64,000 nucleotides of DNA, taken from positions 243,508 through 307,507 of the forward strand of contig NW_018408148.1 in assembly GCF_002113885.1 (NCBI RefSeq), in the 5' to 3' direction. The notes below the pieces were generated by a model. That model ran no database searches. It was given only the letters and a program-made list of their open reading frames with translations, and had not been told where the DNA came from. Positions 337 through 45,038 of the stretch are shown here, piece by piece. The first letter of the stretch is position 1, and each line of letters begins with the position of its first letter. Made by a program: the position numbers and the translations under genes. The DNA comes from Mizuhopecten yessoensis (Eukaryota).

Positions 337-521
337 AAATATGAAATAATGCAAATATTTCAGAATGTACAGAAAAAAGCAGAATGAAAGACTAGAGACG
401 TATCTTAATGTAATGCCAGTAGATTTATTCAGAAAGATGACACATTTAAGAGTCGAGTCACTCAGTAAATTGATGAATCTGTTCTTGATATTAAAGACGT
501 GATTATTGAATTCTGTTACAG

Positions 522-720
522 ATTATGTGGACACGGGAGGGAGCCATTATTTCCTCGTCAGACAAATACAGTGTGGAGACAGCCCCTCTACCTGAGGAGA
601 ACACCTACCACACCAGTCTGACACTGAACCAGGTCACATTGGGTGACGCTGGCACATACAAAGTCAGAGCGTCCAACGAGGAAGGCGACGCCAATGTGTC
701 TGTCTCGCTCCTCGTCAGAG
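522..720 (+). CDS. Ig exon, C-half (IMWTREG...DAGTYKVRASNEEG...LLVR)
   Basis: ttacag acceptor, gtaggt donor, in frame with the previous exon. Confidence 0.9.
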
Positions 721-1217
721 GTAGGTATCTCCGCGAAAGGAGGGTGGGTTGGGGGATAATATCTACGTTACTGACAGAAGAATAGGTCAGGGGAGTTCAT
801 TATTTTTACGCAGAACACTTGATACATTTACTGCTGGCTGAAACAGCTTTACAAGGTATTTTATTATAAAGGTTTACCTCCATTTTTTCAATTTTAAAAG
901 TATTTTATTGACAATACATATATAATACAAACATATAAGTTAACATTAAAGAAGATATTAGAACAGTAGTGACAAAAGAATCAGACAACAGGCTATGCCT
1001 ATATCAGTCTACTTCTTTACCTCCATGACACGATAGTTAGTCAGCGGAGTTCATTATTTGGCCGAAGAACACTGCTGGTGGAAACAGCTTTGCAGGGTAT
1101 TTTATGGAATATTCTTGAGTAGACAGAAAACAAGTTCTTATTTTAGAATTTTTCACAACATATCATGTATAAGTAGTGCTTATAAAGATAGAAATAATTT
1201 CTGTTTTGTTTGTCTAG

Positions 1218-1266
1218 ACGAAGGACCCAAGACGACAGACTTCCGTGATAGTCTCAAAAAAGAAGT
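1218..1266 (+). CDS. DFRxxL mini-exon 1 (DEGPKTTDFRDSLKKEV)
   Basis: tctag / gtaagt; phase 1 to 2. Confidence 0.85.
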
Positions 1267-1741
1267 GTAAGTACTGCATGATGTATTTTTAATCTGTTAA
1301 AGAGTATAATTTATCAAAGCTTTGGTTAGAGAGGATGTTGACCTGGCAGTAAGTGGTAGGTACCTGCTCTTGATTCAACTGATTAAGTTTGAATAAATGG
1401 TACAAAGATTGTTATTTTAACTTAACCATTTTTTTCTCTTTTTCTAGATGTGTGCTTAACTAATTTAGCTAGAAATTAGATGCGAGATATTTCAGTTTTA
1501 TTATTTTCCATTAATATTTGTTGCAATTTCAATTTCAGTTTCTCTAACTTAGATTTAGACTGTGTGAATTACTAATGAACTGTTTATCTCTAACTTCACA
1601 AATTATTTATTTTTTGAAATATTATTTTAGTTTATTAGCCCTGTAATTATAATACACTTGATTTTAGTTCATTACGAGGTAAAATCATCCACTGAACTAA
1701 CTTAATGTAATTTTGTAAATCACTTATTGTTCACAATGGAA

Positions 1742-1832
1742 TTAACCCTTTCACCCCTATGTAACTTTAGTAGACTCTACCATGTATTGATGTGGATGAG
1801 TCCATTATGGTCTACAGTGGTGAAAGGGTTGA
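1742..1832. mobile_element. ~90-bp piggyBac-like MITE, family A
   Basis: ttaa-ccctttcacc ... ggtgaaaggg-ttga inverted termini; opposite-orientation copy at 8738-8828. Confidence 0.65.
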
Positions 1833-2072
1833 ATTTGAGTTCATTATTCCAAGCAGAAGCTAACAGACTTGCATTGTTACAGTCGTAAAATTGAATATTT
1901 GGAAACAGTTGATTTTTAGCAATTTTATTTATGAAATTCCGGAATTGTAAGTGATTAACAAATTACAGTTTGGATTATGGTCACGTGACTAAAATCTAAA
2001 ATAAAAGTGATGTGCCATAACAGTGATCCGATAATTAAAATCATAAATTTCATTAATGCTGTCCACTCACAG

Positions 2073-2144
2073 GAAAACCAGGGTGGGCTTCAAATTAAAA
2101 AAGCCAAAACCACAAGTGGATTTCAGAGCTCATCTAAAGGAAGT
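2073..2144 (+). CDS. DFRxxL mini-exon 2 (KTRVGFKLKKPKPQVDFRAHLKEV)
   Basis: cacag / gtgagt; 72 nt; phase 2-2. Confidence 0.85.
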
Positions 2145-2199
2145 GTGAGTTACTACACCAGAGAAATGCGTTGGTGACACCTGTATTTTGTAACGCTTG

Positions 2200-2710
2200 C
2201 TTTGATTGGATGTTGTCAGAAAATCAAACCATACCTGTCGTGTTTTCTGATTGGATGTCAATCGAAATATACAACCAATATTATTCACCCGTTATGAATA
2301 TTTTTCCTGAATGGTTAAATATATCAACCAATGAAATAGCCTCTCTGTCTGAATGTCCTTGGAAACATCAAAAACCTTTCCTGTCGTGTTTTCTGATTGG
2401 ACGTCTATGGAAATATACAACCAATATTATTCACCCGTTATGAATATTTTTCCTGAATGGATATATACATCAACCAATGAAATAGTCTTCCTGACTGAAT
2501 GTCCTTTGAATCATCAACAACCTTTCCTGTCGTGTTTTCTGATTGGATGTCCGTTGAAATATACAACCAATACATGTAATCCCCTGTTAGGATTTATTTC
2601 CTGAATGGTTTTAAATATGTCAGAGAATGAAATGTCCTTGGAAACATCAACAATCTTTCCTTTGCCTGTTATATTTGTGTTCTATTGGCTTAAATATCAA
2701 CCAATGAAAA
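2200..2710. repeat. Intronic tandem repeat, ~146-bp unit, ~3.5 copies, rich in CCAAT/ATTGG
   Basis: ctgtcgtgttttctgattgg recurs at about 2235, 2381 and 2528. Confidence 0.85.
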
Positions 2711-3203
2711 ACCCTGTCTTCTATATTAGCACAATCATTTAACAACGAATTAGTCCAATATTTGGAATGAATTTTCCTTATAAACAACACCAAAAGTATT
2801 TGTGTAAAAAGGAGCTTTTGTTATTTTTCTAGCATGCTTTGACAGAATTCACAAATCAGCTTCATTTTTACACCTTGCAGAAACCAGGATGTATCATTTG
2901 TATAGCCTGCATTGATTGGTTGGTAGCCAAAAAACAATTGACCACTGAAATTCCTTCTTTTATTTGCTATATAAATGAAGTATAGTTTTTGTGTTGCCTC
3001 CATTTATTCATATCATGGATGAATTTAAGAAGTAAATCTTGTTTTCATGAATGTGTATTACAATGGTGTGCATGAATATAAATGGATGTATTGCACATTT
3101 TTAAATTCTGTTTCATTTTTGTTTCATGTGCATTTTTGATGATTTGCCACGAGGTTATCTTTCTTGCATGTTGTTGTAATTAGCATGTGATTGTGTTATA
3201 CAG

Positions 3204-3272
3204 AAAAACCAGGGTTGGAATAAAACATGCACCAGCACAGAAGGACTTCAGGGAAAATCTCAAAACTGAAGT
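3204..3272 (+). CDS. DFRxxL mini-exon 3 (KTRVGIKHAPAQKDFRENLKTEV)
   Basis: tacag / gtgagt; 69 nt; phase 2-2. Confidence 0.85.
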
Positions 3273-3622
3273 GTGAGTAAAATGGTTGTTAGGGGGAGAT
3301 TTCAAAAAGGAATTTCCATCAGTATCTAGGTAAATTTTCAAAACAGTTTAACAGATTGCAATTTCTTGTTTTTACATATATACAATAATGTATATATATT
3401 GAAAAGATAATGAATAAGTATTAAATAATAACAAGCTAAATGGGATCACTTAGGGAATTAGTTAAAGTAAAACTAACATCACATATAAACATTAAATGTG
3501 TCATGTATATTAGATAGCTTAATGTTAAAAATAACCAATTTGGGCCAATGCTAAGTGAAAGCGAAGCTCAAGATTTTCGATAAATAGTTTAGTTCACTTA
3601 TTGTTATCAAATTTGTGAACAG

Positions 3623-3691
3623 GAAAACGAAGGTCGGTGTATCACATGGTCCTGAGCAAATCGACTTCCGTGACAAACTCAAATCACAGGT
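3623..3691 (+). CDS. DFRxxL mini-exon 4 (KTKVGVSHGPEQIDFRDKLKSQV)
   Basis: aacag / gtaagt; 69 nt; phase 2-2. Confidence 0.85.
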
Positions 3692-4070
3692 GTAAGTACC
3701 TGACTCTCAAGGGTATGGACCCCTTACAATGTGATAATTACCTTCAGAAACTGTTGACACACTCTCACTCTGTGCACCTGTACAAATTACTCGTCTTTCT
3801 TTCCTATATCTCAGTTCTTTAACTCAGAACAAACTTGTTTTTGATGAAAAAATAATTATTAGTTCACTATTACATTTGTCCGATCTGGTATGATAAGCAT
3901 CCAGTTTTATCCATCCTAACATCGTTTATGTGTGTATTTTGCGTAATTTTGTCATTTGTATATTACATCATTGTTTTGTGTGTATGACATCATTGTTTTT
4001 TGTGTCTGAGATCATGTGTTTGTGTGTATGACATGCATGCTAATGAGATTTGTTATTGCCTTGGTAACAG

Positions 4071-4139
4071 TCGGACTAAGGAAGGGGTTTCCTTTGGAGC
4101 AGAACAATTAGACTTTAGGGATAGTCTCAAAAGCAAAGT
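4071..4139 (+). CDS. DFRxxL mini-exon 5 (RTKEGVSFGAEQLDFRDSLKSKV)
   Basis: aacag / gtgagt; 69 nt; phase 2-2. Confidence 0.85.
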
Positions 4140-4442
4140 GTGAGTATAGCAAATGGTTTCTGAAAGAAACCTTTAAAAAAATAAGAAAAAAATATTAACT
4201 CAAAGTCAGCTGTAAAAATTATCTCTACTTTTCATAAAGTGCTTGGAAATAGCTCTATATGTGGTTCAACAAATATAATTAAAAATAAGTTTGATGAAAT
4301 AAAAGGATACATAAAATATATTAAAATAAAATGAAGGGGAGGGAATTATGTCATGAGAAATACATCATGTGACTTTGTCATGTGATATATGTAATGTATG
4401 TCATGGGACATTTTCAAATTTGCATGAACTTTAACATGTTAG

Positions 4443-4511
4443 GAAAACCAAAGTCGGCATGTCCTATCAGGCGGAACAGGTGGATTATAGGGATGCGCTC
4501 CAGCGACAGGT
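4443..4511 (+). CDS. DYRxxL mini-exon 6 (KTKVGMSYQAEQVDYRDALQRQV)
   Basis: gttag / gtaagt; 69 nt; phase 2-2. Confidence 0.85.
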
Positions 4512-4770
4512 GTAAGTAGTAAATTTAAGTCATTTTAGCACAAGCTTATAAGTTTTTTGAGAAGTTATTAAATGATAAATGATTTAAAAAAAAAAGAAAC
4601 TAACAAAAACAACCTGTCTGCAGATTCTTACCTGAAGATTTTCCAAAATGGTAATTTAGAACTTTGTTAGCGGATTGAATCATTCTGAGTGACTGAATAA
4701 ATTACTTGCTGGTTATTTTCCGATGCATTGCATGACTGTGTTTTAACCTGCATGAACTTTGATGAAATAG

Positions 4771-4839
4771 GAAAACCAAAGTTGGAACAACCTTTGCGAC
4801 AGAACAGGTTGATCACAGAGATGCTCTTCAAAAGCAGGT
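4771..4839 (+). CDS. DHRxxL mini-exon 7 (KTKVGTTFATEQVDHRDALQKQV)
   Basis: aatag / gtaagt; 69 nt; phase 2-2. Confidence 0.85.
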
Positions 4840-5060
4840 GTAAGTAGTGAACGTTGAAACTTTTTTTTCGTTCTAGAAAGTTTTCCCAAATTTCAAAATA
4901 TCAAACAGCATTATTAATATTTCATAAAAAATGTAGCTAAAATGGATGCAAGTCCTTTGAATAAAATAAAATACCAAAACTAATAATACATTATAAAACT
5001 ATGTGTCGTAACATGATAAATGACGCTCTACTGATTGGCATGTCAAACTTCCATACATAG

Positions 5061-5129
5061 GCAAACCAAGGTGGGCACGTCTTTTGCCACGGAACAAGTT
5101 GATTATAGAGATGCGCTTCAGCGCCAGGT
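5061..5129 (+). CDS. DYRxxL mini-exon 8 (QTKVGTSFATEQVDYRDALQRQV)
   Basis: catag / gtaagt; 69 nt; phase 2-2. Confidence 0.85.
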
Positions 5130-5501
5130 GTAAGTAGTTAATAATGTTTTGTTAGAAATTCAAATTTTAGCTTTTTAGTTTTGAAAGATATTCCTTTTTT
5201 CAAAATAGACATAGCTTTAAAACAAATATCAGAAATGTAATTTTACTTTTAAACGGCAGATGAGACTAATTTCATAAACCATTGTATCCAAATATCACAT
5301 TTAGTCACGATTACATTTTGTACACTCTATCATCATTGGATGTCTCTTTACCATTATAAAGACAAATGTTGAACAGAATTTATAAAACAGGTCTGTTAAT
5401 GACTTTTACTGCGAGCTTTAATCAGCGAATCCTATTTTCATTATGTAATTTGCATGTTTGCTCTCATTGTGTGTCTTACTTGCATGGTTTTGATGATACA
5501 G

Positions 5502-5570
5502 CGATACCAAGGTCGGCACAGTCTATGCTTCAGAACAGGTGGACTATAGAGACACGCTCCAGAGGGAAGT
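5502..5570 (+). CDS. DYRxxL mini-exon 9 (DTKVGTVYASEQVDYRDTLQREV)
   Basis: tacag / gtgagt; 69 nt; phase 2-2. Confidence 0.85.
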
Positions 5571-5642
5571 GTGAGTACTTCTTAAACAAAGGGAGATAAG
5601 CAAAGAGAATCCACGCACTGAGAGAGGATATCTATATAGTTC

Positions 5643-6065
5643 AAGGGGGGTAACTCTAGAATAGGACCAAAGGGGGTAACTCTAGAATAGGACTAAAGGG
5701 GGTAACTGTAGAATAGGACCAAAGGGTGGTAACTCTAGAATGGGACCAAAGGGGGGTAACTCTAGAATAGGACCAAAGGGGGGTAACTCTAGAATAGGAC
5801 CAAAGGGGGGTAACTGTAGAATAGGACCAAAGGGGGATAACTGTAGAATAATACCAAAGGGGGTAACTCTAGAATAGGACTAAAGGGGAATAGCTCTAAA
5901 ATGGGACCGCAAGGGGGTTAACTATAGAATAAGATCACACAGTTTTTACTATAGAGGAGGACCACAGGGGGATAACTCTAGGTTAGGACCAAAGAGAGAA
6001 CTGCTCTAGGTTAGGACCAAAGACTGGACAACTCTAGATTAGGACCAAAGAGAGGACAACTCTTA
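5643..6065. repeat. Minisatellite, ~24-25-bp unit (aggggggtaactctagaataggacca)
   Basis: Directly visible tandem copies that degenerate toward the 3' end. Confidence 0.9.
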
Positions 6066-6270
6066 AGGGAGAACAAATCCTGATTTTTTTTTTCTAAATT
6101 AGGAATAACTCTGTTGAAGGAACTCAAGGATTACATACTGAACAGAAAATTGAAATAGGATTGTTTTAATGATTTTCATTGATAATAAAAACTGTTTTGA
6201 AAAGTTTTGAACTGATGTTTGTTTTGCATGTAATTATATTGTGATGTGCATGGTGGTTTGTGTTACACAG

Positions 6271-6339
6271 AACGACAAAGGTTGGGGTCACTTACGAATC
6301 TGAGCAGGTTGACTACCGCGATGCCTTACAGACAAAGGT
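6271..6339 (+). CDS. DYRxxL mini-exon 10 (TTKVGVTYESEQVDYRDALQTKV)
   Basis: cacag / gtaagt; 69 nt; phase 2-2. Confidence 0.85.
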
Positions 6340-6803
6340 GTAAGTATTTCGCCCTGCCGTAGGGCAGAGAGAATGAGACGATTACCTGTCTAACGATGCA
6401 AACAAAAAAATAAAAAAACATTACAGAGAGTTTATTTAATATTTAATTAAATTTCAAACAATTTCTTTCTGATATCAACATTTTTACCAAAAGTAATACT
6501 TACAGAATAAGATGTTGGAAGAAAAAGATTTTACAGAAGAACATCAACATTCTTGAACCTAAAATTCTGATGAAAAAATGAAAGATCTTTGAAGTATGAA
6601 GTAAAACTAGATAACATAATGAGTTGAAATTAAGTTTTAATGAATTTTTACCTAACACAATGACATCTAAAGAGAAATGTTAATGTCATAATCATATCGA
6701 AATTTTCAATTTACTTATAAATTGGAGAGAAATATTTATTGTCTAGAAACAGTAAAATTGCATTGGTTTTGCATGTTGCATGGTTTGCTTGTGTTTGCAA
6801 TAG

Positions 6804-6872
6804 GACAACCAAGGTAGGGACCCAAGGTTACCAGGCCGAGCAAATAGACTTCCGCGAAGTTTTACAAAAACA
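6804..6872 (+). CDS. DFRxxL mini-exon 11 (TTKVGTQGYQAEQIDFREVLQKQ)
   Basis: aatag / gtgagt; 69 nt; phase 2-2. Confidence 0.85.
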
Positions 6873-7110
6873 GTGAGTGGAATTTATTTCAGAATCATCC
6901 TCATCAGACGGATTCTTCTCCTTTTTTTGCAGGATTTATGCATTTGTTGAACCATCATATTTTATAGATCATTTATTTAATTGAATTTTTTTTTATGTAA
7001 AGATATCATTCATAAGAGATGTATCAATTACTATGATTTGAAATGTCAAGTCTATCTCAGACGTTAAAATATGGAGTATTTTATTATCATATTATCGTAC
7101 CTATTTTATC

Positions 7111-7201
7111 TTTACTCATTCACCCCTGAAATTTCATGATAAACTATTCCAACATTTTAATTGGAAGAGTTCAAATGTGTCTTCAGGGGTGAATGAGTGA
7201 A
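7111..7201. mobile_element. ~90-bp TTAA-type MITE, family B (copies near 8461-8560, 9243-9333, 10545-10644, 24231-24326, 42394-42484)
   Basis: ctcattcacccct ... aggggtgaatgag inverted termini, often TTAA-flanked. Confidence 0.7.
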
Positions 7202-7412
7202 GGTGTATCATTATGAATAAATGTTTCTTCGATCCCGATACCAGTGTGTGATGCCTACAGAGGTTTGTGTGACACCTGTAGCTATGTCTGTGAAGGACTT
7301 ATAAATAGATGTTTGCGTGACCCCTACAGGTGTGTTTGTGAAGGACTTATAAATAGATGTTTGCGTGACCCCTACAGGTGTGTTTGTCAATGGTTTATTT
7401 CTGTTGTTTCAG

Positions 7413-7482
7413 GACTTTGGAGGAATCCCAGACGGAAGTCCTGACAGCCGAACAGGTAGACTTCCGTGATGTTCTCCAGCAT
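7413..7482 (+). CDS. DFRxxL mini-exon 12 (TLEESQTEVLTAEQVDFRDVLQH)
   Basis: ttcag / gtaagt; phase 2 to 0, closes the array. Confidence 0.85.
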
Positions 7483-7661
7483 GTAAGTCTGTCGATGGCA
7501 TTATAAAGTCACTCTGCATCCTAATCTTACCCCAATGTACACGTTAAAATTCATAAACGATATTTTATCAATTTTTTATGTGGAACTCTTTTAGAATGGA
7601 GAAGCATATAACATTAAGGTAGCATTCATCCTTAAACACATCTATATATCACTCTGTTTAG

Positions 7662-7953
7662 GTCGAAGTGGTCGCACCAAGATTCGAGACCAGGATCGAG
7701 AGCGTGGTTACCAAGGAAGGTGAACCCGCCAAATTTTTCGTGAAAGTCACAGGAAAGCCGGCCCCCACCATTTCGTGGCACCATGACGACCAAGTTCTCA
7801 CCACTGACGAGATCTACAGGGTCACAGAGGGTGAGGAAGGGGAGAGCACTCTTGAACTGCCTGAAGTGTTCCTAGAGGACACTGGCAGGTATACAGTCAA
7901 AGCTGTCAACGAAGCTGGTGAAGCTATCGCCACAGCAGCACTAACAGTGACAG
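7662..7953 (+). CDS. Ig I-set exon (VEVVAPRFETRIES...LTVT), copy 1
   Basis: tttag / gtatgt; complete I-set domain. Confidence 0.9.
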
Positions 7954-8306
7954 GTATGTTCGAGCCTTTATCCTTACTTGCTATGTTTTCCATGTATGTA
8001 ATTTTATGTGAAATTCAATCATGGAGAAAAAGAAAAAAATGAGAAAAATTGAGAAAGAAATTTTATATGTCTGATTGTATCAGATTTCTTTCCAGAACAA
8101 AAGGTTGTTGCTGTGTGCTTAGGAAAATCAGAGCATAAATGATTTTGTCAATTCAATATTGAAAGGAAATGGAAAGAAAATATTCTAGGAGAAAATATAC
8201 TGAAATGATATCTATAACTATCTGATGAAGATTTTCTCAAAACCAAAATGAGGTATAGTTATTGTCCAAAGAAAATCTGAGGAGACCTTTTTTCTCAATT
8301 TTGCAG

Positions 8307-8439
8307 AGGAAATCGTTCAAGAGGAAACTTTCTCAACAACAGAAATCATTCAACAGGAAGTTACGCAGACAGTCGAATCGGAACAAGTGGTTTCTGTCCA
8401 GCAAACCATAGAAACCTCTGATGTCACCAGAACACAAGT
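8307..8439 (+). CDS. E/Q/T/V-rich linker exon (EIVQEETFSTTEII...TRTQV), copy 1
   Basis: tgcag / gtatgt; phase 1 to 2; open frame. Confidence 0.8.
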
Positions 8440-8737
8440 GTATGTAGCATTTCAGTTTTTTTAACTCATTCACTCCTACATATTTAAAATGGACTTGCCC
8501 GGTCTGTGAATTCTGTGATTTGGTAAGGTTCAAATGTTACTTTAGGGGTGAATGGGTTAAATAGTTCTGAACACAAGTGTTTGTAGCGTTTAATCTTCTT
8601 TTTCCAAGTAGTTTTGCAGGATTCTGTTGTTCAGAGCACTTTGAAATTAATGAGAAGATAATCTAAATTTTAAAAAAATACTATAATTTTTTTCATCAGC
8701 ATCTGATATTGATATGGTGTTTGCTTTTATATGAGCG

Positions 8738-8828
8738 TTAATCCTTTCTCCACTGTAGACAATAATGGACTCATCCAGATAAATGTATGATAGAGTCTAC
8801 TAAAGCTACCTAGGGGTGAAAGGGTTAA
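8738..8828. mobile_element. MITE family A copy
   Basis: ttaa ... ggggtgaaaggg-ttaa; reverse complement of 1742-1832. Confidence 0.65.
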
Positions 8829-8913
8829 AGGTCCTTACATATGTATCTTGTGAAGACAATATCCCGTCACATTGCCAGGTTCTGTAATTTCTTCTTCTGT
8901 ACAATTCTCACAG

Positions 8914-8994
8914 GCGACAATTTTTTGGTTATAAGTCTCCACCAGGACTTCTAGACTTCAGAAATGTTTTACGACCTATTACAATGAGGTCAAG
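8914..8994 (+). CDS. DFRxxL mini-exon 13 (RQFFGYKSPPGLLDFRNVLRPITMRS), copy 1
   Basis: cacag / gtgaga; 81 nt; phase 2-2. Confidence 0.75.
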
Positions 8995-9495
8995 GTGAGA
9001 AATGGGTTCTGTTACCGCGGCAACAAGGCCCATAACACAGAGTTGGATTGAAGTTTGATTGCTGAGGATAAAAAGTGTTGTTTTTTTGTTAGTTTTTTTC
9101 CAGTAAAAACATGCTAGATAAGTTTTGCTAGAAAAAAGAAAGTAGCCTCTTTCCATGGGTATTTGAAAAATTAAAAAAATTAATGAATTGAGTAATGTTT
9201 TGTGTGATGAAGTTTTTCAATTAATGTCGTACCTATTTTATCTTTACTCATTCACCCCTGAAATTTCATGATAAACTATTCCAACATTTTAATTGGAAGA
9301 GTTCAAATGTGTCTTCAGGGGTGAATGAGTGAAGGTGTATCATTATGAATAAATGTTTCTTCGATCCCGATACCAGTGTGTGATGCCTACAGAGGTTTGT
9401 GTGACCCCTGTAGCTAGTCTGTGAAGGACTTATAAATAGATGTTTGCGTGACCCCTACAGGTGTGTTTGTCAATGGTTTATTTCTGTTGTTTCAG

Positions 9496-9565
9496 GACTT
9501 TGGAGGAATCCCAGACGGAAGTCCTGACAGCCGAACAGGTAGACTTCCGTGATGTTCTCCAGCAT
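9496..9565 (+). pseudogene. Duplicated mini-exon 12 with destroyed donor (GT to TT at 9566)
   Basis: cagcat|ttaagt versus cagcat|gtaagt in copy 1. Confidence 0.75.
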
Positions 9566-9744
9566 TTAAGTCTGTCGATTGCATTATAAAGTCACTCTGC
9601 ATCCTAATCTTACCCCAATGTACACGTTAAAATTCATAAACGATATTTTATCAATTTTTTATGTGGAACTCTTTTAGAATGGAGAAGCATATAACATTAA
9701 GGTAGCATTCATCCTTAAATACATCTATATATCACTCTGTTTAG

Positions 9745-10036
9745 GTCGAAGTGGTCGCACCAAGATTCGAGACCATGATCGAGAGCGTGGTTACCAAGGA
9801 AGGTGAACCCGCCAAATTTTTCGTGAAAGTCACAGGAAAGCCGGCCCCCACCATTTCGTGGCACCATGACGACCAAGTTCTCACCACTGACGAGATCTAC
9901 AGGGTCACAGAGGGTGAGGAAGGGGAGAGCACTCTTGAACTGCCTGAAGTGTTCCCAGAGGACACTGGCAGGTATACAGTCAAAGCTGTCAACGAAGCTG
10001 GTGAAGCTATCGCCACAGCAGCACTAACAGTGACAG
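9745..10036 (+). CDS. Ig I-set exon, copy 2 (M and P where copy 1 has R and L)
   Basis: Intact splice sites; 292 nt as in copy 1. Confidence 0.8.
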
Positions 10037-10389
10037 GTATGTTCGAGCCTTTATCCTTACTTGCTATGTTTTCCATGTATGTAATTTTATGTGAAATTCA
10101 ATCATGGAGAAAAAGAAAAAAATGAGAAAAATTGAGAAAGAAATTTTATATGTCTGATTGTATCAGATTTCTTTCCAGAACAAAAGGTTGTTGCTGTGTG
10201 CTTAGGAAAATCAGAGCATAAATGATTTTGTCAATTCAATATTGAAAGGAAATGGAAAGAAAATATTCTAGGAGAAAATATACTGAAATGATATCTATAA
10301 CTATCTAATGAAGATTTTCTCAAAACCAAAATGAGGTATAGTTATTGTCCAAAGAAAATCTGAGGAGACCTTTTTTCTCAATTTTGCAG

Positions 10390-10522
10390 AGGAAATCGTT
10401 CAAGAGGAAACTTTCTCAACAACAGAAATCATTCAACAGGAAGTTACGCAGACAGTTGAATCGGAACAAGTGGTTTCTGTCCAGCAAACCATAGAAACCT
10501 CTGATGTCACCAGAACACAAGT
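10390..10522 (+). CDS. E/Q/T/V-rich linker exon, copy 2
   Basis: Duplicate of 8307-8439 with intact sites. Confidence 0.75.
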
Positions 10523-10997
10523 GTATGTAGCATTTCAGTTTTTTTTAACTCATTCACGCCTACATATTTAAAATGGACTTGCTCGGTCTGTGAATTCTGT
10601 GATTTGGTAAGGTTCAAATGTTACTTTAGGGGTGAATGGGTTAAATAGTTCTGAACACAAGTGTTTGTAGCGTTTAATCTTCTTTTTCCAAGTAGTTTTG
10701 CAGGATTCTGTTGTTCAGAGCACTTTGAAATTAATGAGAAGATAATCTAAATTTTAAAAAAATATTATAATTTTTTTCATCAGCATCTGATATTGATATG
10801 GTGTTTGCTTTTATATGAGCGTTAATCCTTTCTCCACTATAGACAATAATGGACTCATCCAGATAAATGTATGATAGAGTCTACTAAAGCTACCTAGGGG
10901 TGAAAGGGTTAAAGGTCCTTACATATGTATCTTGTGAAGACAATATCCCGTCACATTGCCAGGTTCTGTAATTTCTTCTTCTGTACAATTCTCACAG

Positions 10998-11078
10998 GCG
11001 ACAATTTTTTGGTTATAAGTCTCCACCAGGACTTCTAGACTTCAGAAATGTTTTACGACCTATTACAATGAGGTCAAG
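10998..11078 (+). CDS. DFRNVL mini-exon, copy 2
   Basis: Duplicate of 8914-8994. Confidence 0.7.
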
Positions 11079-11781
11079 GTGAGAAATGGGTTCTGTTACC
11101 GCGGCAACAAGGCCCATAACACAGAGTTGGATTGAAGTTTGATTGCTGAGGATAAAAAGTGTTGTTTTTTTGTTTGTTTTTTTTCCAGTAAAAACATGCT
11201 AGATAAGTTTTGCTAGAAAAAAGAAAGTAACCTCTTTCCATGGGTATTTGAAAAATTAAAAAATTAATGAATTGAGTAATGTTTTGTGTGATGAAGTTTT
11301 TCAATTAATGTTATTTGAAAGTGTTGATTTTTATGCCAGATAAAGTAAAATATAGTTCATAAGAAAGGTCTTAATTAATCTATGTTTTGATAATTGACCA
11401 ATATATTTGTATTAACACTGTTTGAAGTTTGTACTGATTGTGATTTTTTCAGCGTTTTTTTTGCTTTGTGACTGTTGACCTTAATCGGTCTAAATATGGC
11501 TATGCTAAAATGAAGGACACATACTTTATGTCAAATTGTAGATGATTATTGAGTAATTCAAAAGTAGACCTAATTATAACAGAAGTGATTTCTCCCGATG
11601 GGCGAACAATTTTCCGTACGATAGGATAATTCTAACAGATTTCTTATTCTTATTGTCTTATTAGTTATGTAACAAGCTGATATGTTTATGTTGATTTAGT
11701 TTTCCTGCTCTTACTTGCGGCAGTTTATGAATTCCCTGTAATATATAGCCAACGTAACTTTACTTTTGATTCCTCCAACAG

Positions 11782-11833
11782 AGACGTCTCAGCCGGCCTC
11801 ATTGCAGAGGAACAGGTCTCAGAGATCCAGAAG
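11782..11833 (+). CDS. Linker mini-exon (DVSAGLIAEEQVSEIQK)
   Basis: aacag / gtgggt; supplies the required phase 2 to 0 transition. Confidence 0.75.
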
Positions 11834-11976
11834 GTGGGTGATCAACCACATGAGATAATAACATGTCTGTTGGAGACACAGATAGAGCCAAACGTATCAT
11901 CAAGTTAATTTCTGATATGTTTTTTCTGAAGTTAGACATACAATGGATTCCTTTTGTGTAAATATCTGTAAAGACA

Positions 11977-12182
11977 GTTAAACCTGCTCAAGTTTACTTT
12001 AAGAGTAATCAAGAGACCACCTGTGTTAAGAGACCACTTTTAATGTTTCCCATTGTAGTAATTTTGTTGCAAACTGAACCTGTGTTAAGAGACCACCTGT
12101 ATTAAGAGACCACCTGTGTTATGAAACCACCTTTGAAAATAAATTGTAATTCTTCAGCGAGGTCTGTTAATGCAGGTTTGGT
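11977..12182. mobile_element. MITE-like element with internal taagagaccac repeats
   Basis: aaacctgc ... gcaggttt ends; 4-5 copies of aagagaccac. Confidence 0.5.
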
Positions 12183-12411
12183 TTTATACAAATTAAGTGT
12201 TACAAATGATGAAAACTATACCAAAGGTAATTTCTTTTTTTAATTTGAAACAGATGTACTTTCATATAAACATAAAATGCATGTCTTACAATTTCTTTGA
12301 TAAACTTAACCATCATGATAGCTATAGAATTCTTTTTTGAAAGGTAGTTTTCCGTATTACTACAGAAATTTTGAAATATCGTAGACATTCCAATGTTGTT
12401 GTGGTTTGCAG

Positions 12412-12706
12412 GTTGGTGACCTCGTTGCTCCGGCAGTTACTGTCGAGATTGACAAAGCGGTTGCAAAGGAAGGAGAGCCTGTCCAGTTCATCGCCAAGGC
12501 GTCTGGTTCACCGGCCCCGACCCTCCAATGGTACTATGGCACAGAGCCAATCACCACCGACGAGATCTACAAGGTCACAGAGAGTAAGGAAGGGGAGAGC
12601 ACTCTGGAGTTGGCCGAAGTCTTCCCAGAGGATGCTGGTCAATATACAGTCAAGGCTGTCAATGGGGCAGGAGAGGCCGTCGCTACAACAACACTCAACA
12701 TCGTTG
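12412..12706 (+). CDS. Ig I-set exon (VGDLVAPAVTVEIDK...LNIV), older paralog of 7662-7953
   Basis: tgcag / gtaggt; shares TTDEIY.VTE..EGESTLEL.EVF.ED.G.YTVKAVN. Confidence 0.9.
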
Positions 12707-13090
12707 GTAGGTTTTCATTTTTCGCCGTAACATTATTTACGTTTTTTCTTCATTTTACCAGAAGATCCACCATCCAAATTACACTGAAGGTGAAATTTAA
12801 CACGGGAAATCAGGTGTTACTATAACTACAATCAAACCTCAATGTGATGTTCGTCGTTTCATTAACCATTTACTATTCTGTCATTTAATTGCATTATCTC
12901 ATATTCCTTGCATTTGAATTTATTCAAACGTCTCCTTGGAGATAATGTTGATAGTCTCTATAATGCTGAAATTTCTCTATTCAAATCGAGGCAATATTAC
13001 GTTTTAACAGTTTTCCAACAATCTCTAACTGGTATTTTTTAATTGTTGTACAGGATTATAACTTTTCATTTAAATATTTTATCATTGTAG

Positions 13091-15291: not shown

Positions 15292-15741
15292 ATGAAAAAT
15301 TATACGGGGGATGTTGACAAGGAATGCTGTATTGGAAATGCATCTTGAAATGTCTTGATAAAGTGACTTAGGCCGGAGCTAGATTTGAAAGCTGATGATG
15401 TCCTATATACAGAAAATATTGGTGACAAGAATATCCTAACAACCCTATTTTATACACTTAACCTTTGTTTTTAGAGAGCAAACATTCACTGCAATTCCCT
15501 ACAAAATGCTCACCAATTTGTAGAGGGGACTGTCTCATAATCAAAAAATGATTTCATTGAATCAAAAAATTCTTTTTGACATTATTGATGAAGATTGGAA
15601 ATGTTAACAAATTTAACTATGAAAAAAATATCTTTTCAAAAAAGTAATGTCAAACTTAATTTTTGATTTTGAGATTTTCCCCATTTTTTAATCAGAAAGC
15701 ATGCTGGTAAACGCTTGCCCTTTTGCTTCCTTTTCACACAG

Positions 15742-17346
15742 TCTTCGCATGCCTTCCCCGACACACAGTACGAAGTAGGTACAAAAGTTTTCACATGGCA
15801 CCTCCGTTCGGAGGGCATGCAGGACGCGGGTAACTTACCCACACCCACTCTATTGAAGGAGGAAGTCGAGGTTATCGGTGACGACGAGGAATTCTATGAA
15901 GCTGAAGAATCAGTACCGCAATTCAGCTTCGAGGCGAAGGTTGATACTGATGAAGAATCTGACGTTGTGTCAGATACTGAAGAGAAACCAGAATATACCT
16001 TCAACGCCGATTTCAGTATTGACAGTCAGATTATAAAAGACAAAGAATCTGAGGAGGAATTCACATTCATCCTCAAAGAGGATGTCCCTGAACGGTCTCC
16101 GGAGAAGGACGTTGATGAGACAGATGAGTTTACCTTTGTCACCAAAGATGACATCCCAAAATTGGATCTGCCTCACTCTTCATCAGATGAAGAAGAGGAG
16201 GTACGAAGACCCAGACCGGTACAGGATGATGACTTGTCTATATCCAGTTCAGAGGAATATATCTCAGACGAGGAGGTTGTTGTATCCTCTGCCAGCTCAG
16301 ATTCGGAGCCTGAAACAGACAAGGAACAACGTAAAGTATTGATGCCGGACGTAGTCCCTAAACATAAAGAGCCCATCAAAGTCTACCCCACTTCATCCTC
16401 CTCATCTACCTCTGAGGAAGAAGAAGAAGAAGATGAGGTGAAGGATCAGACTTTTGATGCAACTGTCTTTGTGGAGGAGAAGCTACAACCAGACAGTGTA
16501 CCAGTAGAAGAAGCAATGGTTCCGGTAGATGAGCCCTTTGTGTCCTCGTTCGAGATTGTGTCCAGGGATGAATACATGTCCAGACAGGCGATACTCGAGC
16601 CAGACGACGTGACATATGAGGCAAAATTAGAAGACAAGGAAGTTGAACAGCCTTTTACATCCACAGCAGAAGAAGCTGTCTTCACCCTCAAAACAGATGA
16701 GGAAGAGGAACCGTCTGCTCCGCATACAGAACATGACTTTGATGTCCGTCTTGAAACTGATGAAGAACCTCGAGAGGATGTTGTAGTCCAGATGTACATG
16801 GATAAGAAGTCCGACGATGAAGAACTTTTGGAGGAGTTTACTATCTCGGCTCCTAAAGACAAGAGGGAGGAGATCATGTTTGAGGAAAAGCAACCTGACG
16901 TGAGCGTGGAAGAACTGATGGAAGAACAAGATCAGGAATTAAAACCGACACCAGAGTTTTCCTTTGAGGCGGAGATTCAGGAAGAAAGACTAGATGATGA
17001 GGATATTGGTGAAGTGTCCTATGAGATTGAGGTATCAGAACCGAGAGAATCGGATGTCTCATTTGATGACCAGTCACTGAACGTCGTGATGACTGTCGAT
17101 AACGATATTTCACTGCCAAGTGACATCTCATCCGAAGGCATTGAAGAAGATGATGAGCTTTACGAGGACATTGAAGAGTTCCAGGGAACGACAGTGTCTG
17201 TTCTCGAGACTGTGCCAGAGGAATCATCGCTGGAGGAGAGTCGATCCGCAGACATCACACCCGAGGTGGATCAAGATGTCTCGTTCTCATTCTCCGTGGA
17301 CGACGGACCGAAGGATGAGGTTCAGGAATCATTCTCAATCTCAGAG
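15742..17346 (+). CDS. Large acidic (E/D/S/V/P-rich) disordered exon, 535 aa
   Basis: Pyrimidine tract plus cacag acceptor; GAG|gtaatg donor; phase 0-0; ORF 15715-17415. Confidence 0.85.
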
Positions 17347-19412
17347 GTAATGAATGGAGGACACGTTTATACAGGGGGAGAGCTGGTGAAGGGAGATAAT
17401 TTCTCCAGTTTATAGAGTTTCCCTTAAAGGGAGATCACTGTCCCAAAATAGATTAATGGTTCACAAAGGGGAGACCACTTCCACAACTTTTCAGAGTCCT
17501 TAAAAAATGGCACCGTACTTTTGCGCAAATTTCTAAAATTAAAGGGAGATAATTAGTTTAACCAGAACAGTGCTGCTTTCTAACTAATCAATTTATAAGT
17601 GGTACAGTTCTTACGCCCTAACCAACACTATAGTTAAATCTATAGAAAAAAGTCCTAAAATATTCATTAAATTATAAGATTTCGCATTACTATTCATAAC
17701 CATTTCATTCATCTGAGGTTTTGGTCCTCTAATCATTTCATATCTGTAACGTTCATCCTTAATAATAACACTTAAGACTATTTCATGTTTTCTTCTTCTC
17801 CTTAATATTGCCATTTGTGACGTGGTTTGAGAAGGATTTAAATACCATATGAAAAACAGCGCTTTGTATTGAAGTGTGAATTTAAAGCTAATTCATGCTG
17901 AGCATGCAGATGTGCTATATTTGTGGTTGTGACCATCAAGTTCATCAGCTACTTGGCAACTCATCAGTGTCCCAGTTCTTCATGTAAAATTCTGAATTCC
18001 CAAAATTATATGTAAACATGTTTAAATAAATTCCAAAGCTATATAAAATCTGTATACTTACAAAAGTAGATATGTATATAGACCAAGAGATTTTTATTAA
18101 TATATTCCTGAAGATATATTGGGGAAAAAACGTTGCAAGGATCACATTGGGGAAAAAACTGCTCTCTCAAAGCTGGATTTCATATCAAGTTTACTTAAAA
18201 GAATTTTATCAAAATATCTTGAATTTTAATCTTGATTTAAAATGAAAACATCAGTTCTGATATTGGTCAATAATGCTAATGCTATATTGTGGCTTAGATA
18301 CACATTTTAAAATTTCATTCGTAGAAATATATCCGCGAACACGCCACACCAGCTAGCTAGCACTATCTTCACCTGTTCCTAAATTGTACTGCTGAAATCC
18401 TATATTTATATATACACTCCACTTTATGCTCCCAATCTCTGTAAACAATCCAGTCTGTCCCTCCCTGCATATTTACACCATCCATTTATCTGCCCCTTTG
18501 TCATTGCCTGTAATACAGGCAGACATTGTCCAACACAGTTGCCTCCCCTTGTTTGAAGCTCTCCATATTGAAGTGTATTTGTTGTGTGATGTGGTATGGA
18601 GAATTGCGCTGCTCTATTGTGGGATTTTATGAGTAGGTGTTGTCTGTGAATTGTTTTACAGAGTATCAAGCCTTCGATATATTTCCGTGAACAAGAAGCC
18701 ATTTATTCAAAATCATATCTTTATTCACCTTTAAGGCTTTTTAAAAAAATTGTGAGTTTAGTCAGTGTAGAATTTCCAATATTGTATCTCAACGATTAGA
18801 ATCAAGATATAATGAAGATTATAGCTTCTTGAATGTTTCAATTTCTGAGAAGCTAACATTTTTTTTTTTATTAATTATTATTTTATGTTATAGATAATAA
18901 TCTGTTCCCTTTATTATTTAGCCATTAGACAGACATTTTACTTTTATTGTACTTCTGTTACAAGACAGCAATTTCTTTCCTAGAAATAGAGTTTGATCAG
19001 AGTAGATTTTTCTTTTATTTATTTATTGAAGAAAAAACCCACAAGAGTTATCTTTCCTTGAGTGGGTTTGTTACCTACCTAAATGGTTTATTGTGGTGCT
19101 ATGACCAGAGAAAGGTGTAGTTGCATACCTTTGGTGTTTTATGAATGGGTGTGAGCTCTTTTTATTTTTTTTTGCATCTTTTATATTGTGAAATTTTGGG
19201 AAAATCAAATGAAAATGTTCTTGAATTCTAATGAAACTTTTAATATGCCTGTATGGGATTATTCCTTATCCCTTTGAAATTCTTTCCTTCAAAACATTTC
19301 CAGAACATTTTCATGCTTTTTTGTTGTGGCAATAATTTTAGAATGAGATATTTTGTAATTGCATGGATACAACTTTGAATTGTTTTACTAAATGACCTTG
19401 AACTTTGATTAG

Positions 19413-42365: not shown

Positions 42366-42700
42366 GTGTGTTGAATACAATGTTCTAATTTCTATAACTC
42401 ATTCACCCCTGAAATTTCATAATGAACAATTCCAACCTTTGTATTGGAAGAGTTCAGATGTGTCTTCAGGGTTGAATGAGTTAATGAAAATTTTTGCTTC
42501 TGCAGTAGAAACATGATTTTTACATGACAATGGCCACATTTACTGAGATGAAAATGTCAAATGTATCAATATCGTTTACATTACTTTGGTTGCTATGGTT
42601 ACCTAATGGATGTATGTATCATTTATGTAAGTAGTGTTGCCATATTTACATGTATTCATGGTGAGAGCATGTCATTATAATAATTAACTTGATTACACAG

Positions 42701-42986
42701 GTGCCATGGCGATGTTCCGCTGCATCCCCGATGGAGAGCCCAAACCCACCATCGCGTGGTCCAAGGGTAAATGGCAGAAGATTAAAGACGATAAGAAATA
42801 CCATGTGTTTTATGATGAGGAGACTAACGAACAGGTCCTCGAGATTAGATCGGTACAGAAGAAGGATGCCGGTACCTACCTCATCACGATCACCAACGAA
42901 CACGGAACGTGTGATGCACCTGCCACTCTGATGGTTACCAATGACGAGGGAGAAGTCAATGATTGGCTGGAGCAACTCAAACACAG
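42701..42986 (+). CDS. Ig exon plus linker start (AMAMFRCIPDGEPKP...VNDWLEQLKHR)
   Basis: cacag / gtaggt. Confidence 0.88.
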
Positions 42987-43371
42987 GTAGGTCAAAGGTC
43001 AAGGACAGAAATGAACTATGGACGCTATTAGTCTGGCAAGCTTGACATGATTTATCAAAAAGCAATTGGGACCACAGGACAGTGAAAATTACAGGATGAA
43101 GTGTTATGAAATGCCATTTGTGGCTGTAAAATGTCAAGGGGTAAAATGTCAAGGGTCAGGAGGTGATGAATAGGTCACGAAGTATCATACAGGATTATAG
43201 GTCAGGATGTGACCTTCAAGATCATAGGTCAACAATTAAATCTGTTTCATTTGCTAAATGTTTTTATGAATTTTCTGTTTTTGATTCATATTTATACATA
43301 AAATGTTAATGATACATTGTATTATGAGTTTTAGTATATAGGGTCTCATAAACTAACATGTATTGTTGTAG

Positions 43372-43537
43372 GGAATTTACCCGTAACCAAGGTGATGAAG
43401 CTGTTGAATGGATGCCTCAGCTCCGCCATGTTGAACATGAGGGAGACCAGCCAGATGCCAAGAAGTTTGTACCAGGAACTAAAGAGTTGGACGAAGCTAC
43501 TGCTCATGAAATTTACCGTCGCAGCTCCCGACCCGAG
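43372..43537 (+). CDS. Unique linker exon (EFTRNQGDEAVEWMPQLRHVE...EIYRRSSRPE)
   Basis: tgtag / gtaaga; phase 2 to 0. Confidence 0.8.
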
Positions 43538-44032
43538 GTAAGATAATATCGCAGACAGCTTCCGACCCGATGTAAGATAATATCGCAGACAGCTCCCAAC
43601 CTGAGGTAAGATAATATCGCAGGCAGCTCCCGACCCTAGGTAAGATAATATCACAGACAGCTCCCGACCCGATGTAAGATAATATCGCAGAAAGCTCCCA
43701 ACCCGAGGTAAGATAATATCACAGACAGCTCCCGACCCGAGGTAAGATAATATCACAGACAGCTCCCGACCCGAGGTAAGATAATATCACAGACAGCTCC
43801 CGACCCGAGGTAAGATAATATCACAGACAGCTCCCGACCCGAGGTAAGATAATATCACAGACAGCTCCCGACCCGAGGTAAGATAATATCACAGACAGCT
43901 CCCGACCCGAGGTAAGATAATATCACAGACAGCTCCCGACCCGAGGTAAGATAATATCACAGACAGCTCCCGACCCGAGGTAAGATAATATCACAGACAG
44001 CTCCCGACCCGAGGTAAGATAATATCGCAGAC
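43522..44032. repeat. 34-bp minisatellite, 15 copies, each containing the exon end and 5' splice site
   Basis: cagctcccgacccgag|gtaagataatatcacaga; GT every 34 nt from 43538 to 44014. Confidence 0.95.
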
Positions 44033-44172
44033 TTACTGTATGCTGATTAGACTTAATTAAGAAACGATAAAATATAATCATATCATTACATATATAATAT
44101 CTGAAATGATAACATCTTCTAAAAATTAAAATATAATAGTCAAATATTTATAACATGGTGCCATGGTTACAG

Positions 44173-44364
44173 TTGACTGATGCTCAATGGGATCATGAGA
44201 TGAGCCAGAGGTCAAAGGTTGCTCTTGAGGCGTCTGCCCCAGAGAAAGGTGCCGAGGTAACAGCACCACCGAGAAAGCCCATCAAGGACAAGTACAGCCG
44301 TCTCATCAAACCCCAGAAGATCGAAGAGGCACCACCAGTCAAACTCGTCATACCAAAGGCTCAG
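44173..44364 (+). CDS. PEVK-like linker exon (LTDAQWDHEMSQRSK...PPVKLVIPKAQ)
   Basis: tacag / gtacgc; phase 0-0. Confidence 0.8.
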
Positions 44365-44779
44365 GTACGCACAGATGACATATGACAATCCAGGCACATT
44401 TATTGGGAACTACGGTGGCTGAAGTACTTTTCACCAGGGAATTTTCGGTCCTTTTTATTTTCGCCTTTTTCGCCCTTCGTAACTTACCATCACAGTGGAC
44501 ATATGTCAACAACCCTATATACATAGTAATCAAATGTGACAAGTTCTATCGGTTTAGAAATATTCCAAGTCCCTTTCTGACATTTTTGATTTAATTTTTC
44601 ACAATCGTTGCAAATTAGTTCTGTAGTCTGTGTTAAGTTCAATTGAAAATTTGTTAGATTTCAAAAGTCACAACTATTTTACGGTAATTTTCACAAAATA
44701 TCATCCGTGATCATTATAAAGCTGTCACGATTTCTTGATGTTTTGGTGCCTTCATTAGTGTTATACATATGTGTTGCAG

Positions 44780-45038
44780 TGGAAGGTCCTCCAACCTTTG
44801 CATGACCTTGAGGTAATGGAGATGGATGAGGCTCGATTTGAGTGCGAGTTCAGCGTACCAAACGTTATGGTAACCTGGAAGGTCAATGGGGAGCGTATTG
44901 AGGCCACTCCTAAGTACATGATCGAGATTGAAAAGACAAAACACACTCTGATTGTGACCAAGTGTAAACCCAAAGATTCCTGCAATGTCAGCTGCTCCTA
45001 CGCTAAACTCAACACTGAGGCAAATCTCGTTGTTAATG
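44780..45038 (+). CDS. Ig exon (WKVLQPLHDLEVME...LVVN)
   Basis: tgcag / gtaagc. Confidence 0.88.

What the first reader, a model, noticed from the sequence alone, without database searches (positions are those of the whole stretch)
1218..7482. Hidden array of 12 one-repeat-per-exon mini-exons encoding MLCK-type DFRxxL actin-binding-like motifs in a titin-like protein
Seen: 12 short exons mostly missed by the ORF track. Ten are symmetric phase 2-2 (nine of 69 nt, one of 72 nt). Each encodes a ~23-aa unit with consensus KTKVG.S..(A/S/T)EQVD(F/Y)RD.L(K/Q).(E/Q/K)V. A 13th (DFRNVL) lies at 8914. Established: DFRxxL is the actin-filament-binding motif of vertebrate smooth-muscle MLCK (3 copies in the short form, 5 in the long form, ~28-aa spacing), with contexts such as EQMDFRANLQRQV that closely resemble EQVDYRDALQRQV here. 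Inference: a multivalent thin-filament-binding segment whose copy number (about 2-12) can be set by frame-preserving exon skipping, tuning actin avidity between muscle types (e.g. catch versus striated).
Basis: partly seen in the sequence, partly recalled or inferred. Interest (0 to 1): 0.92.

Follow-up and report, generated by a model that had tools for sequence, protein, structure and literature searches.

The report
Spliceable actin-grip repeats in mollusc titin
A mollusc's giant muscle protein titin carries twelve copies of a short motif that smooth-muscle myosin kinase uses to hold on to actin, each copy on its own tiny exon, and RNA reads show that some of these exons are left out, so a muscle can probably set how firmly its titin grips the thin filament.

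Summary
Confirmed. Twelve mini-exons (1218-7482), ten of them symmetric phase 2-2, each encode one ~23-residue unit around D(F/Y/H)RxxL, between two Ig exons of a mollusc titin gene (collinear with Aplysia and Elysia titins). RNA from four studies shows splicing at the predicted sites for exons 1 and 3-9, with exon 2 usually skipped and exon 4 skipped in one sample only; exons 5-9 stayed chained; one sample hints at skipping of the whole block. A profile built from these units alone retrieves vertebrate MLCK and tunicate MLCK-like proteins. Orthologues hold 4-10 units, often in one large exon, so one-unit-per-exon is lineage-specific. (T)GCATG Rbfox sites lie before 8/10 cassette exons versus 1/32 other acceptors; the two exons without them are the two skipped singly. 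Best reading: a disordered, multivalent F-actin anchor, switched mainly as a block and fine-tuned by single exons. Actin binding, Rbfox action and any catch-versus-striated role are inferred, not tested; only 7 of 12 units are strict DFRxxL. The scan had noted the Rbfox sites on this same stretch; nothing on other DNA.

The parts
522..720 (+). E0: second half of the Ig domain that precedes the array (ends phase 1)
   Evidence: sequence; joint 720>1218 in 17 reads, 3 runs; matches Aplysia titin Ig before its units
1218..1266 (+). E1: unit 1, 49 nt, phase 1-2, needed for frame
   Evidence: orthologue in L008 has the same 49 nt and phases
1275..1280 (+). TGCATG 9 nt downstream of the E1 donor (position that usually favours inclusion)
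   Evidence: function inferred
2073..2144 (+). E2: unit 2, 72 nt, basic (+6), no upstream GCATG, mostly skipped
3204..3272 (+). E3: unit 3, 69 nt; GCATG sites at 3165 and 3183
3623..3691 (+). E4: unit 4, 69 nt, no upstream GCATG, skipped in run X24 only
4071..4139 (+). E5: unit 5; TGCATG at 4034
4443..4511 (+). E6: unit 6 (DYR); TGCATG at 4421; in-frame ATG at 4459
4771..4839 (+). E7: unit 7 (DHR variant); TGCATG at 4729 and 4749
5061..5129 (+). E8: unit 8 (DYR); GCATG at 5038
5502..5570 (+). E9: unit 9 (DYR); TGCATG at 5451 and 5481
6271..6339 (+). E10: unit 10 (DYR); TGCATG at 6225 and 6247
   Evidence: not covered by the read test
6804..6872 (+). E11: unit 11; TGCATG at 6770 and 6777
   Evidence: not covered by the read test
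7413..7482 (+). E12: unit 12, 70 nt, phase 2-0, needed for frame
   Evidence: orthologous unit in gastropod titins; not covered by the read test
7662..7953 (+). Ig exon that follows the array
8914..8994 (+). 81-nt phase 2-2 candidate exon with the bare hexamer (weak 13th unit)
   Evidence: not tested with reads, absent from gastropod models
9227..11311 (+). second copy of 7095-9227 (E12, Ig, linker exon, 13th exon); the E12 copy has lost its GT donor at 9566

Best explanation
The array is a disordered, multivalent thin-filament anchor in the I-band part of a mollusc titin. Each ~23-residue unit is an MLCK-type DFRxxL module that binds one actin protomer (inferred from MLCK, where three motifs cover three actins). 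E1 and E12 are fixed by reading frame, so every product keeps at least two units; the ten cassettes between them are added without changing frame (shown by sequence). Eight cassettes (E3, E5-E11) have weak polypyrimidine tracts and (U)GCAUG sites 20-50 nt before the acceptor, where Fox-1-family proteins block branch-point recognition, so they are probably silenced together in cells with Rbfox activity (inferred), giving a roughly 2-unit versus 10-11-unit switch; E2 and E4 lack the site and vary on their own (skipping shown in RNA). More units would mean higher avidity for actin and a shorter free spring or more drag between titin and the thin filament in that muscle type (inferred).
For: Exons real and spliced, E2 and E4 skipped, E4 skipping sample-dependent (10 skip vs 4 inclusion reads in X24; 0 vs 10 in X19+X23; p=0.013 by read starts). 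Profile of the units retrieves vertebrate MYLK and kinase-bearing MLCK-like proteins; the conserved columns are D, R, L plus the preceding EQ, the residues modelled against actin in PMC2196421. Units kept between the same two Ig domains in Aplysia, Elysia, Plakobranchus and three other genomes. Repeat segment has no predicted fold (pLDDT 22-36, single-sequence model). GCATG 8/10 vs 1/32 acceptors, p=3e-6; flanks otherwise at chance identity (0.30); weaker pyrimidine tracts, p=8e-4; same site kept before both exons of L003 and the exon of L006. Upstream (U)GCAUG represses exons, including a -34 site that blocks SF1 (PMC2777236). In X22 at least one read runs 54 or more letters past the E1 donor into sequence outside 500-5635 and E2-E9 have zero depth.
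Against: No binding experiment; five units have Y or H in place of F and most units are near neutral in charge, while MLCK binding is partly electrostatic. Read counts are low (1-14 per joint and run), tissues unknown. Block skipping rests on arithmetic on binned depth for two reads, not on a listed joint. Runs X19 and X23 cover the array but hardly E0, which this model does not explain. The eight GCATG sites are paralogous and so not fully independent.
Confidence: 0.68

Rival explanations
1. Same actin anchor, but isoforms arise mainly from an internal promoter (or an upstream exon that bypasses E0-E3): a shorter titin product begins in or near the array and carries the units at its N-terminus, as short smooth-muscle MLCK does.
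For: E0 depth 0.2x and 0x against 7x and 3x on E5-E9 in X19 and X23, while X22 and X24 cover E0 well; in-frame ATG in E6 (sequence); several database hits begin with Met just before a unit (P0032, P0045).
Against: No spliced novel first exon and no pile-up of read starts (tables 5 and 6); E0-E1-E3 and E1-E3 reads exist in X19 and X23; few molecules per joint.
Confidence: 0.14
2. The units are spring or spacer modules like PEVK exons: splicing tunes the contour length of titin, and the hexamer is a relic or binds weakly.
For: Disordered prediction; titins tune elasticity by exon skipping (established knowledge); F replaced by Y/H in five units.
Against: D, R and L are invariant in all 12 units and across phyla while the rest varies, which a spacer does not need; 230 residues is a small length change beside the 580-residue acidic exon at 15673-17412.
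Confidence: 0.1
3. The units bind a partner other than actin (for example alpha-actinin or a dense-body protein), working like vertebrate titin Z-repeats whose copy number differs between fibre types.
For: Same design principle as titin Z-repeats, 2-7 copies by muscle type (PMC2799012).
Against: Sequence family is the MLCK motif, not the 45-residue Z-repeat; the array lies deep in the protein, behind an SH3 region in orthologues, not at the N-terminus.
Confidence: 0.05
4. The exons are effectively constitutive; skipping of E2 and E4 is splicing noise or an allele of one animal, and GCATG is carried along by duplication.
For: E5-E9 never skipped singly; E4 skipping seen in one run only.
Against: E2 skipped in three studies; E4 skip is the major form in X24 with 7 read starts; intron flanks have diverged to chance while GCATG stayed and it is kept in another species.
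Confidence: 0.03

Closest known systems
DFRxxL actin-binding motifs of vertebrate smooth/non-muscle MLCK (MYLK)
   Same: Same repeat family by profile search; tandem units in a disordered segment behind an Ig domain; in tunicate MLCK-like proteins the Ig domains flanking the units are mostly the best matches of the flanking Igs here (small margins).
   Different: 12 units rather than 3 or 5; 23- rather than 28-residue period; host is a titin with no kinase in this window; number set by cassette exons; Y/H variants.
Mollusc twitchin D1 region
   Same: A single DFRxxL occurs in twitchin-like proteins (Babylonia, residue 1075), where Mytilus twitchin has its D1 site (Ser-1075, PMC12040844). From memory, Funabara et al. 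2003 named a DFRXXL motif there; that paper was not held.
   Different: One motif next to a PKA site in a 530-kDa thick-filament protein, not a 12-unit spliced array; this gene matches titin models at 43-72% but Babylonia twitchin only at about 30%.
Titin Z-repeats and nebulin Z-repeats
   Same: Short binding repeats whose copy number is set by alternative splicing according to muscle type (PMC2799012, PMC7754682).
   Different: Unrelated sequence; different position and partner (alpha-actinin for titin Z-repeats).
Fox-1/Rbfox-repressed cassette exons (F1-gamma exon 9, calcitonin exon 4, egl-15 exon 5B)
   Same: (U)GCAUG in the upstream intron near the branch point, often with GU-rich neighbours.
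   Different: Here the element is repeated before eight tandem paralogous exons; regulation not tested.

Membership tests
MLCK-type DFRxxL actin-binding repeat | D-F-R-x-x-L hexamer | tested here: met
   strict in 7 of 12 units; DYR in 4, DHR in 1
MLCK-type DFRxxL actin-binding repeat | similarity beyond the hexamer, in tandem copies | tested here: met
   profile of the window's units finds vertebrate MYLK fragments at E 1e-6 to 1e-3 among 1.84 billion proteins
MLCK-type DFRxxL actin-binding repeat | about 28-residue spacing | tested here: not met
   23 residues here; the family ranges from 23 to over 30
MLCK-type DFRxxL actin-binding repeat | binds F-actin, one motif per protomer, lost on alanine change | not testable with these tools
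   needs co-sedimentation
MLCK (MYLK) gene family | Ig-Ig-Fn3-kinase-Ig module shortly after the units | tested here: not met
   no kinase match in the 56 kb downstream; more than 30 Ig exons follow instead
titin/connectin (mollusc) | collinear with annotated mollusc titins | tested here: met
   Aplysia, Elysia, Plakobranchus models match in order from 519 to about 48,600; these names are automatic annotations
titin/connectin (mollusc) | N2A-like element followed by distal-type tandem Ig | tested here: met
   Ig at 44783 has titin entry 7AHS as best solved match, E 1e-21, then I27-type domains; that 7AHS is the N2A I81-I83 region, and the KGKW signature at 42.7 kb, rest on my own knowledge
titin/connectin (mollusc) | A-band Fn3/Ig super-repeats and kinase at the C-terminus | not testable with these tools
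   gene runs off both ends of the window
Rbfox-regulated cassette exons | (U)GCAUG enriched in the upstream flank and conserved | tested here: met
Rbfox-regulated cassette exons | inclusion changes with Rbfox level or site mutation | not testable with these tools
   needs minigene or knock-down
copy-number-spliced repeat array (Z-repeat principle) | frame-preserving exons skipped in transcripts | tested here: met
   E2 and E4 skipping
copy-number-spliced repeat array (Z-repeat principle) | copy number differs by muscle type | tested here: inconclusive
   differs between runs but tissues are not given and counts are low

The most novel reading that the evidence does not exclude
Lophotrochozoan titin has a dedicated, MLCK-homologous thin-filament clamp whose valency is switched by an Rbfox-read splicing code (about 2 versus 10-12 units) between muscle types, and which supplies part of the load-bearing thick-thin filament linkage in catch or other tonic muscle; the MLCK actin anchor would then be an ancient titin-family module.
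Probability: 0.3. Interest if true: 0.85.

Novelty: new variant of a known kind. Interest (0 to 1): 0.62.

Why it matters
How titins engage the thin filament, and what carries force in molluscan catch, are open questions; the review PMC12040844 states that twitchin is too scarce to be the catch link alone. A titin segment with up to twelve copies of a characterised actin-binding motif, each removable by splicing, gives a direct test: affinity against unit number in vitro, and unit number against muscle type in RNA. The repeat has no Pfam model and the paper library holds the term DFRXXL only for vertebrate MLCK, yet the same unit occurs in 3-9 copies in many invertebrate proteins, so a widespread actin-binding repeat family is unannotated.

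Tried and rejected
Homologue search with the Ig exon 7662-7952 found nothing (length window of the tool). PDB search with the unit profile: no relative. Pfam: no family for the unit, no WH2 or thymosin match. No further units hidden in the window. MLCK gene identity rejected (no kinase); twitchin identity rejected. The single-sequence structure model is low-confidence and was not searched against fold libraries. Primary twitchin and myosin III papers were not held, so those comparisons rest on memory. The single read-laying run covered 500-5635 only (6,000-letter limit), so E10-E13, the 1266>7413 block skip and the duplication junction were not tested directly. Thousands of reads laid at 1741-1830 and about 850-1000 are interspersed repeats, not expression of this gene.
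Full report
OBSERVATION. A six-frame search finds twelve D[FYH]RxxL units on the + strand between 1238 and 7459, each inside a short exon with canonical AG/GT ends. E1 (1218-1266) is phase 1-2, E2-E11 are phase 2-2 (one of 72 nt, nine of 69 nt), E12 (7413-7482) is phase 2-0. Shuffles give 0.13 such hits on average. Twelve of the fourteen strong donor sites in the region end these exons, and third codon positions have diverged far more than first and second (0.36 versus 0.67 and 0.75). Seven units are strict DFRxxL, four DYRxxL, one DHRxxL. The '13th' unit at 8914-8994 has the hexamer only (3.8 bits).

TRANSCRIPTS. Raw RNA reads of four studies laid on 500-5635 show joints at exactly the predicted sites: 720>1218 (17 reads), 3272>3623 (4), 3691>4071 (14), 4139>4443 (21), 4511>4771 (12), 4839>5061 (13), 5129>5502 (15). 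Two frame-preserving skips are seen: 1266>3204, leaving out E2 (5 reads, three runs; no E1-E2 joint reached the listing threshold and E2 has depth only in X24), and 3272>4071, leaving out E4 (10 reads from 7 starts, X24 only; p=0.013 by starts against X19+X23). The tool marks these two joints, and the ordinary E3-E4 joint, 'between: not known'. E5-E9 were never skipped singly. In X22, E2-E9 have no depth while two reads cross 720>1218 and cover all of E1; from the binned depths at least one of them continues 54 or more letters into sequence outside the stretch. That fits a jump to E11, E12 or beyond, but it is an inference from two reads. X19 and X23 cover the array but hardly E0, which is unexplained. 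Tissues are not given.

THE GENE. The window is part of one giant Ig-domain gene. Aplysia titin (P0024/P0083), Elysia (P0080) and Plakobranchus titin (P0111) match in order from 519 to about 48,600; the Ig at 44783 has a human titin entry as its best solved match. No kinase lies in the window. The animal is therefore most likely a mollusc; I could not name it, and that it has catch muscle is not shown. Orthologous loci L007 and L008 place an SH3-bearing exon and two Ig domains before the units and an Ig and IQ motif after them.

THE UNIT. A 23-position profile made only from the window's twelve exons retrieves 50 proteins from 1.84 billion, most with 3-9 tandem units. They include vertebrate MYLK fragments with 28-residue spacing (one named from the frog Hymenochirus), an Ig-Fn3-kinase protein of MLCK architecture (P0044) and gastropod titin. 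In the MLCK-like proteins P0014, P0044 and P0090 the Ig domains flanking the units are mostly the best matches of the flanking Igs of mollusc titin (margins are small), which suggests descent of the whole Ig-units-Ig module. In MLCK the motif binds F-actin, three motifs to three protomers, Kd 0.26 uM, and the long form has five (PMC2196421); binding is partly ionic and allows sliding along actin (PMC4586593). The segment has no predicted fold and no Pfam family.

EXON LAYOUT ACROSS SPECIES. Gastropod titin models have four units. L008 has a 49-nt phase 1-2 exon like E1 followed by one large exon with nine units; L007 and L001 have four units in one exon (L001 phase 2-2); L003 and L005 have 69-nt one-unit exons like the window. 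The array is old; its splitting into one unit per exon and its growth to twelve are lineage-specific.

SPLICING CODE. GCATG is the most enriched 5-mer before the cassette exons: 8 of 10 have it 20-50 nt upstream of the acceptor against 1 of 32 other acceptors of the gene (p=3e-6); the flanks are otherwise at chance identity, and the pyrimidine tracts are weaker than elsewhere (0.54 versus 0.68). The site is kept in L003 and L006, not in the one L005 exon with enough flank. One more lies 9 nt after the E1 donor. Fox-1-family proteins repress exons from this upstream position and enhance from downstream (PMC2777236). E2 and E4, the only cassettes without the site, are the two seen skipped singly. 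I found this before consulting the scan's notes; note s1-529747 on the same stretch says the same and is not independent support.

MECHANISM. Shown: exons, frames, splicing, single skips, family membership by sequence, motif enrichment. Inferred: each unit binds an actin protomer; E1 and E12 give a floor of two; Rbfox silences E3 and E5-E11 together; the result is a low- versus high-avidity anchor of titin's I-band part to the thin filament, with E2 and E4 as fine tuning. Rivals: internal promoter (0.14), plain spring (0.10), another partner (0.05), noise (0.03).

COMPARISON AND NOVELTY. The motif is known (MLCK; from memory also once in Mytilus twitchin and in myosin III tails; a single copy at residue 1075 of Babylonia twitchin-like agrees). 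Setting repeat number by splicing is known from titin and nebulin Z-repeats. The combination, a twelve-unit MLCK-type array in titin, one unit per exon, with a shared Rbfox-type code, was not found in the papers searched, a library that lacks most subscription journals. It is a new variant of a known kind. It works like the MLCK actin anchor by sequence; it is not an MLCK gene.

LIMITS.

Noticed in passing
window 7095-9227 and 9227-11311: Recent tandem duplication (15 substitutions and a 48-nt indel in 2.1 kb) of E12, the Ig exon, a linker exon and the 13th exon; the E12 copy has GT changed to TT at 9566, so frame allows only one Ig copy per transcript. Could also be an assembly or haplotype artefact.
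   Followed up: partly
window 11782-12707: Older paralogue of the E12-Ig pair: a phase 2-0 linker exon without the motif and an Ig exon 80% identical to 7662-7953; gastropods have one Ig here.
   Followed up: partly
window 500-720 versus 4071-5570: Runs X19 and X23 cover the array at 3-7x but E0 at 0-0.2x; X22 shows the opposite.
   Followed up: partly
window 1741-1830 (also 8740-8828, 10824-10912) and about 850-1000: Palindromic high-copy interspersed element in introns; thousands of RNA reads from other loci lay on it.
   Followed up: no
window 5643-6050 and 2226-2572: Intronic tandem repeats, 27 nt x 15 and 146 nt x 2.4.
   Followed up: no
window 15673-17412: Single very acidic open frame of about 580 residues, PEVK-like spring exon.
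   Followed up: no
window 42688-45037: Titin N2A-like layout: Ig with a KGKW signature, short unique inserts, then distal-type Ig domains.
   Followed up: partly
window 43522-44032: 34-nt minisatellite next to the N2A-like exons.
   Followed up: no
protein P0030/P0055: A protein assigned to the heterolobosean Percolomonas has six similar units, so the repeat may occur outside animals (or be convergent or contaminating).
   Followed up: no
proteins P0070, P0066: Drosophila and Limulus kettin-type titins carry a single DYRxVL right after an Ig domain near their C-terminus.
   Followed up: no
L007 and L001, whole loci: TGCATG is about three times denser on the sense than on the antisense strand in these orthologous loci too.
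   Followed up: no
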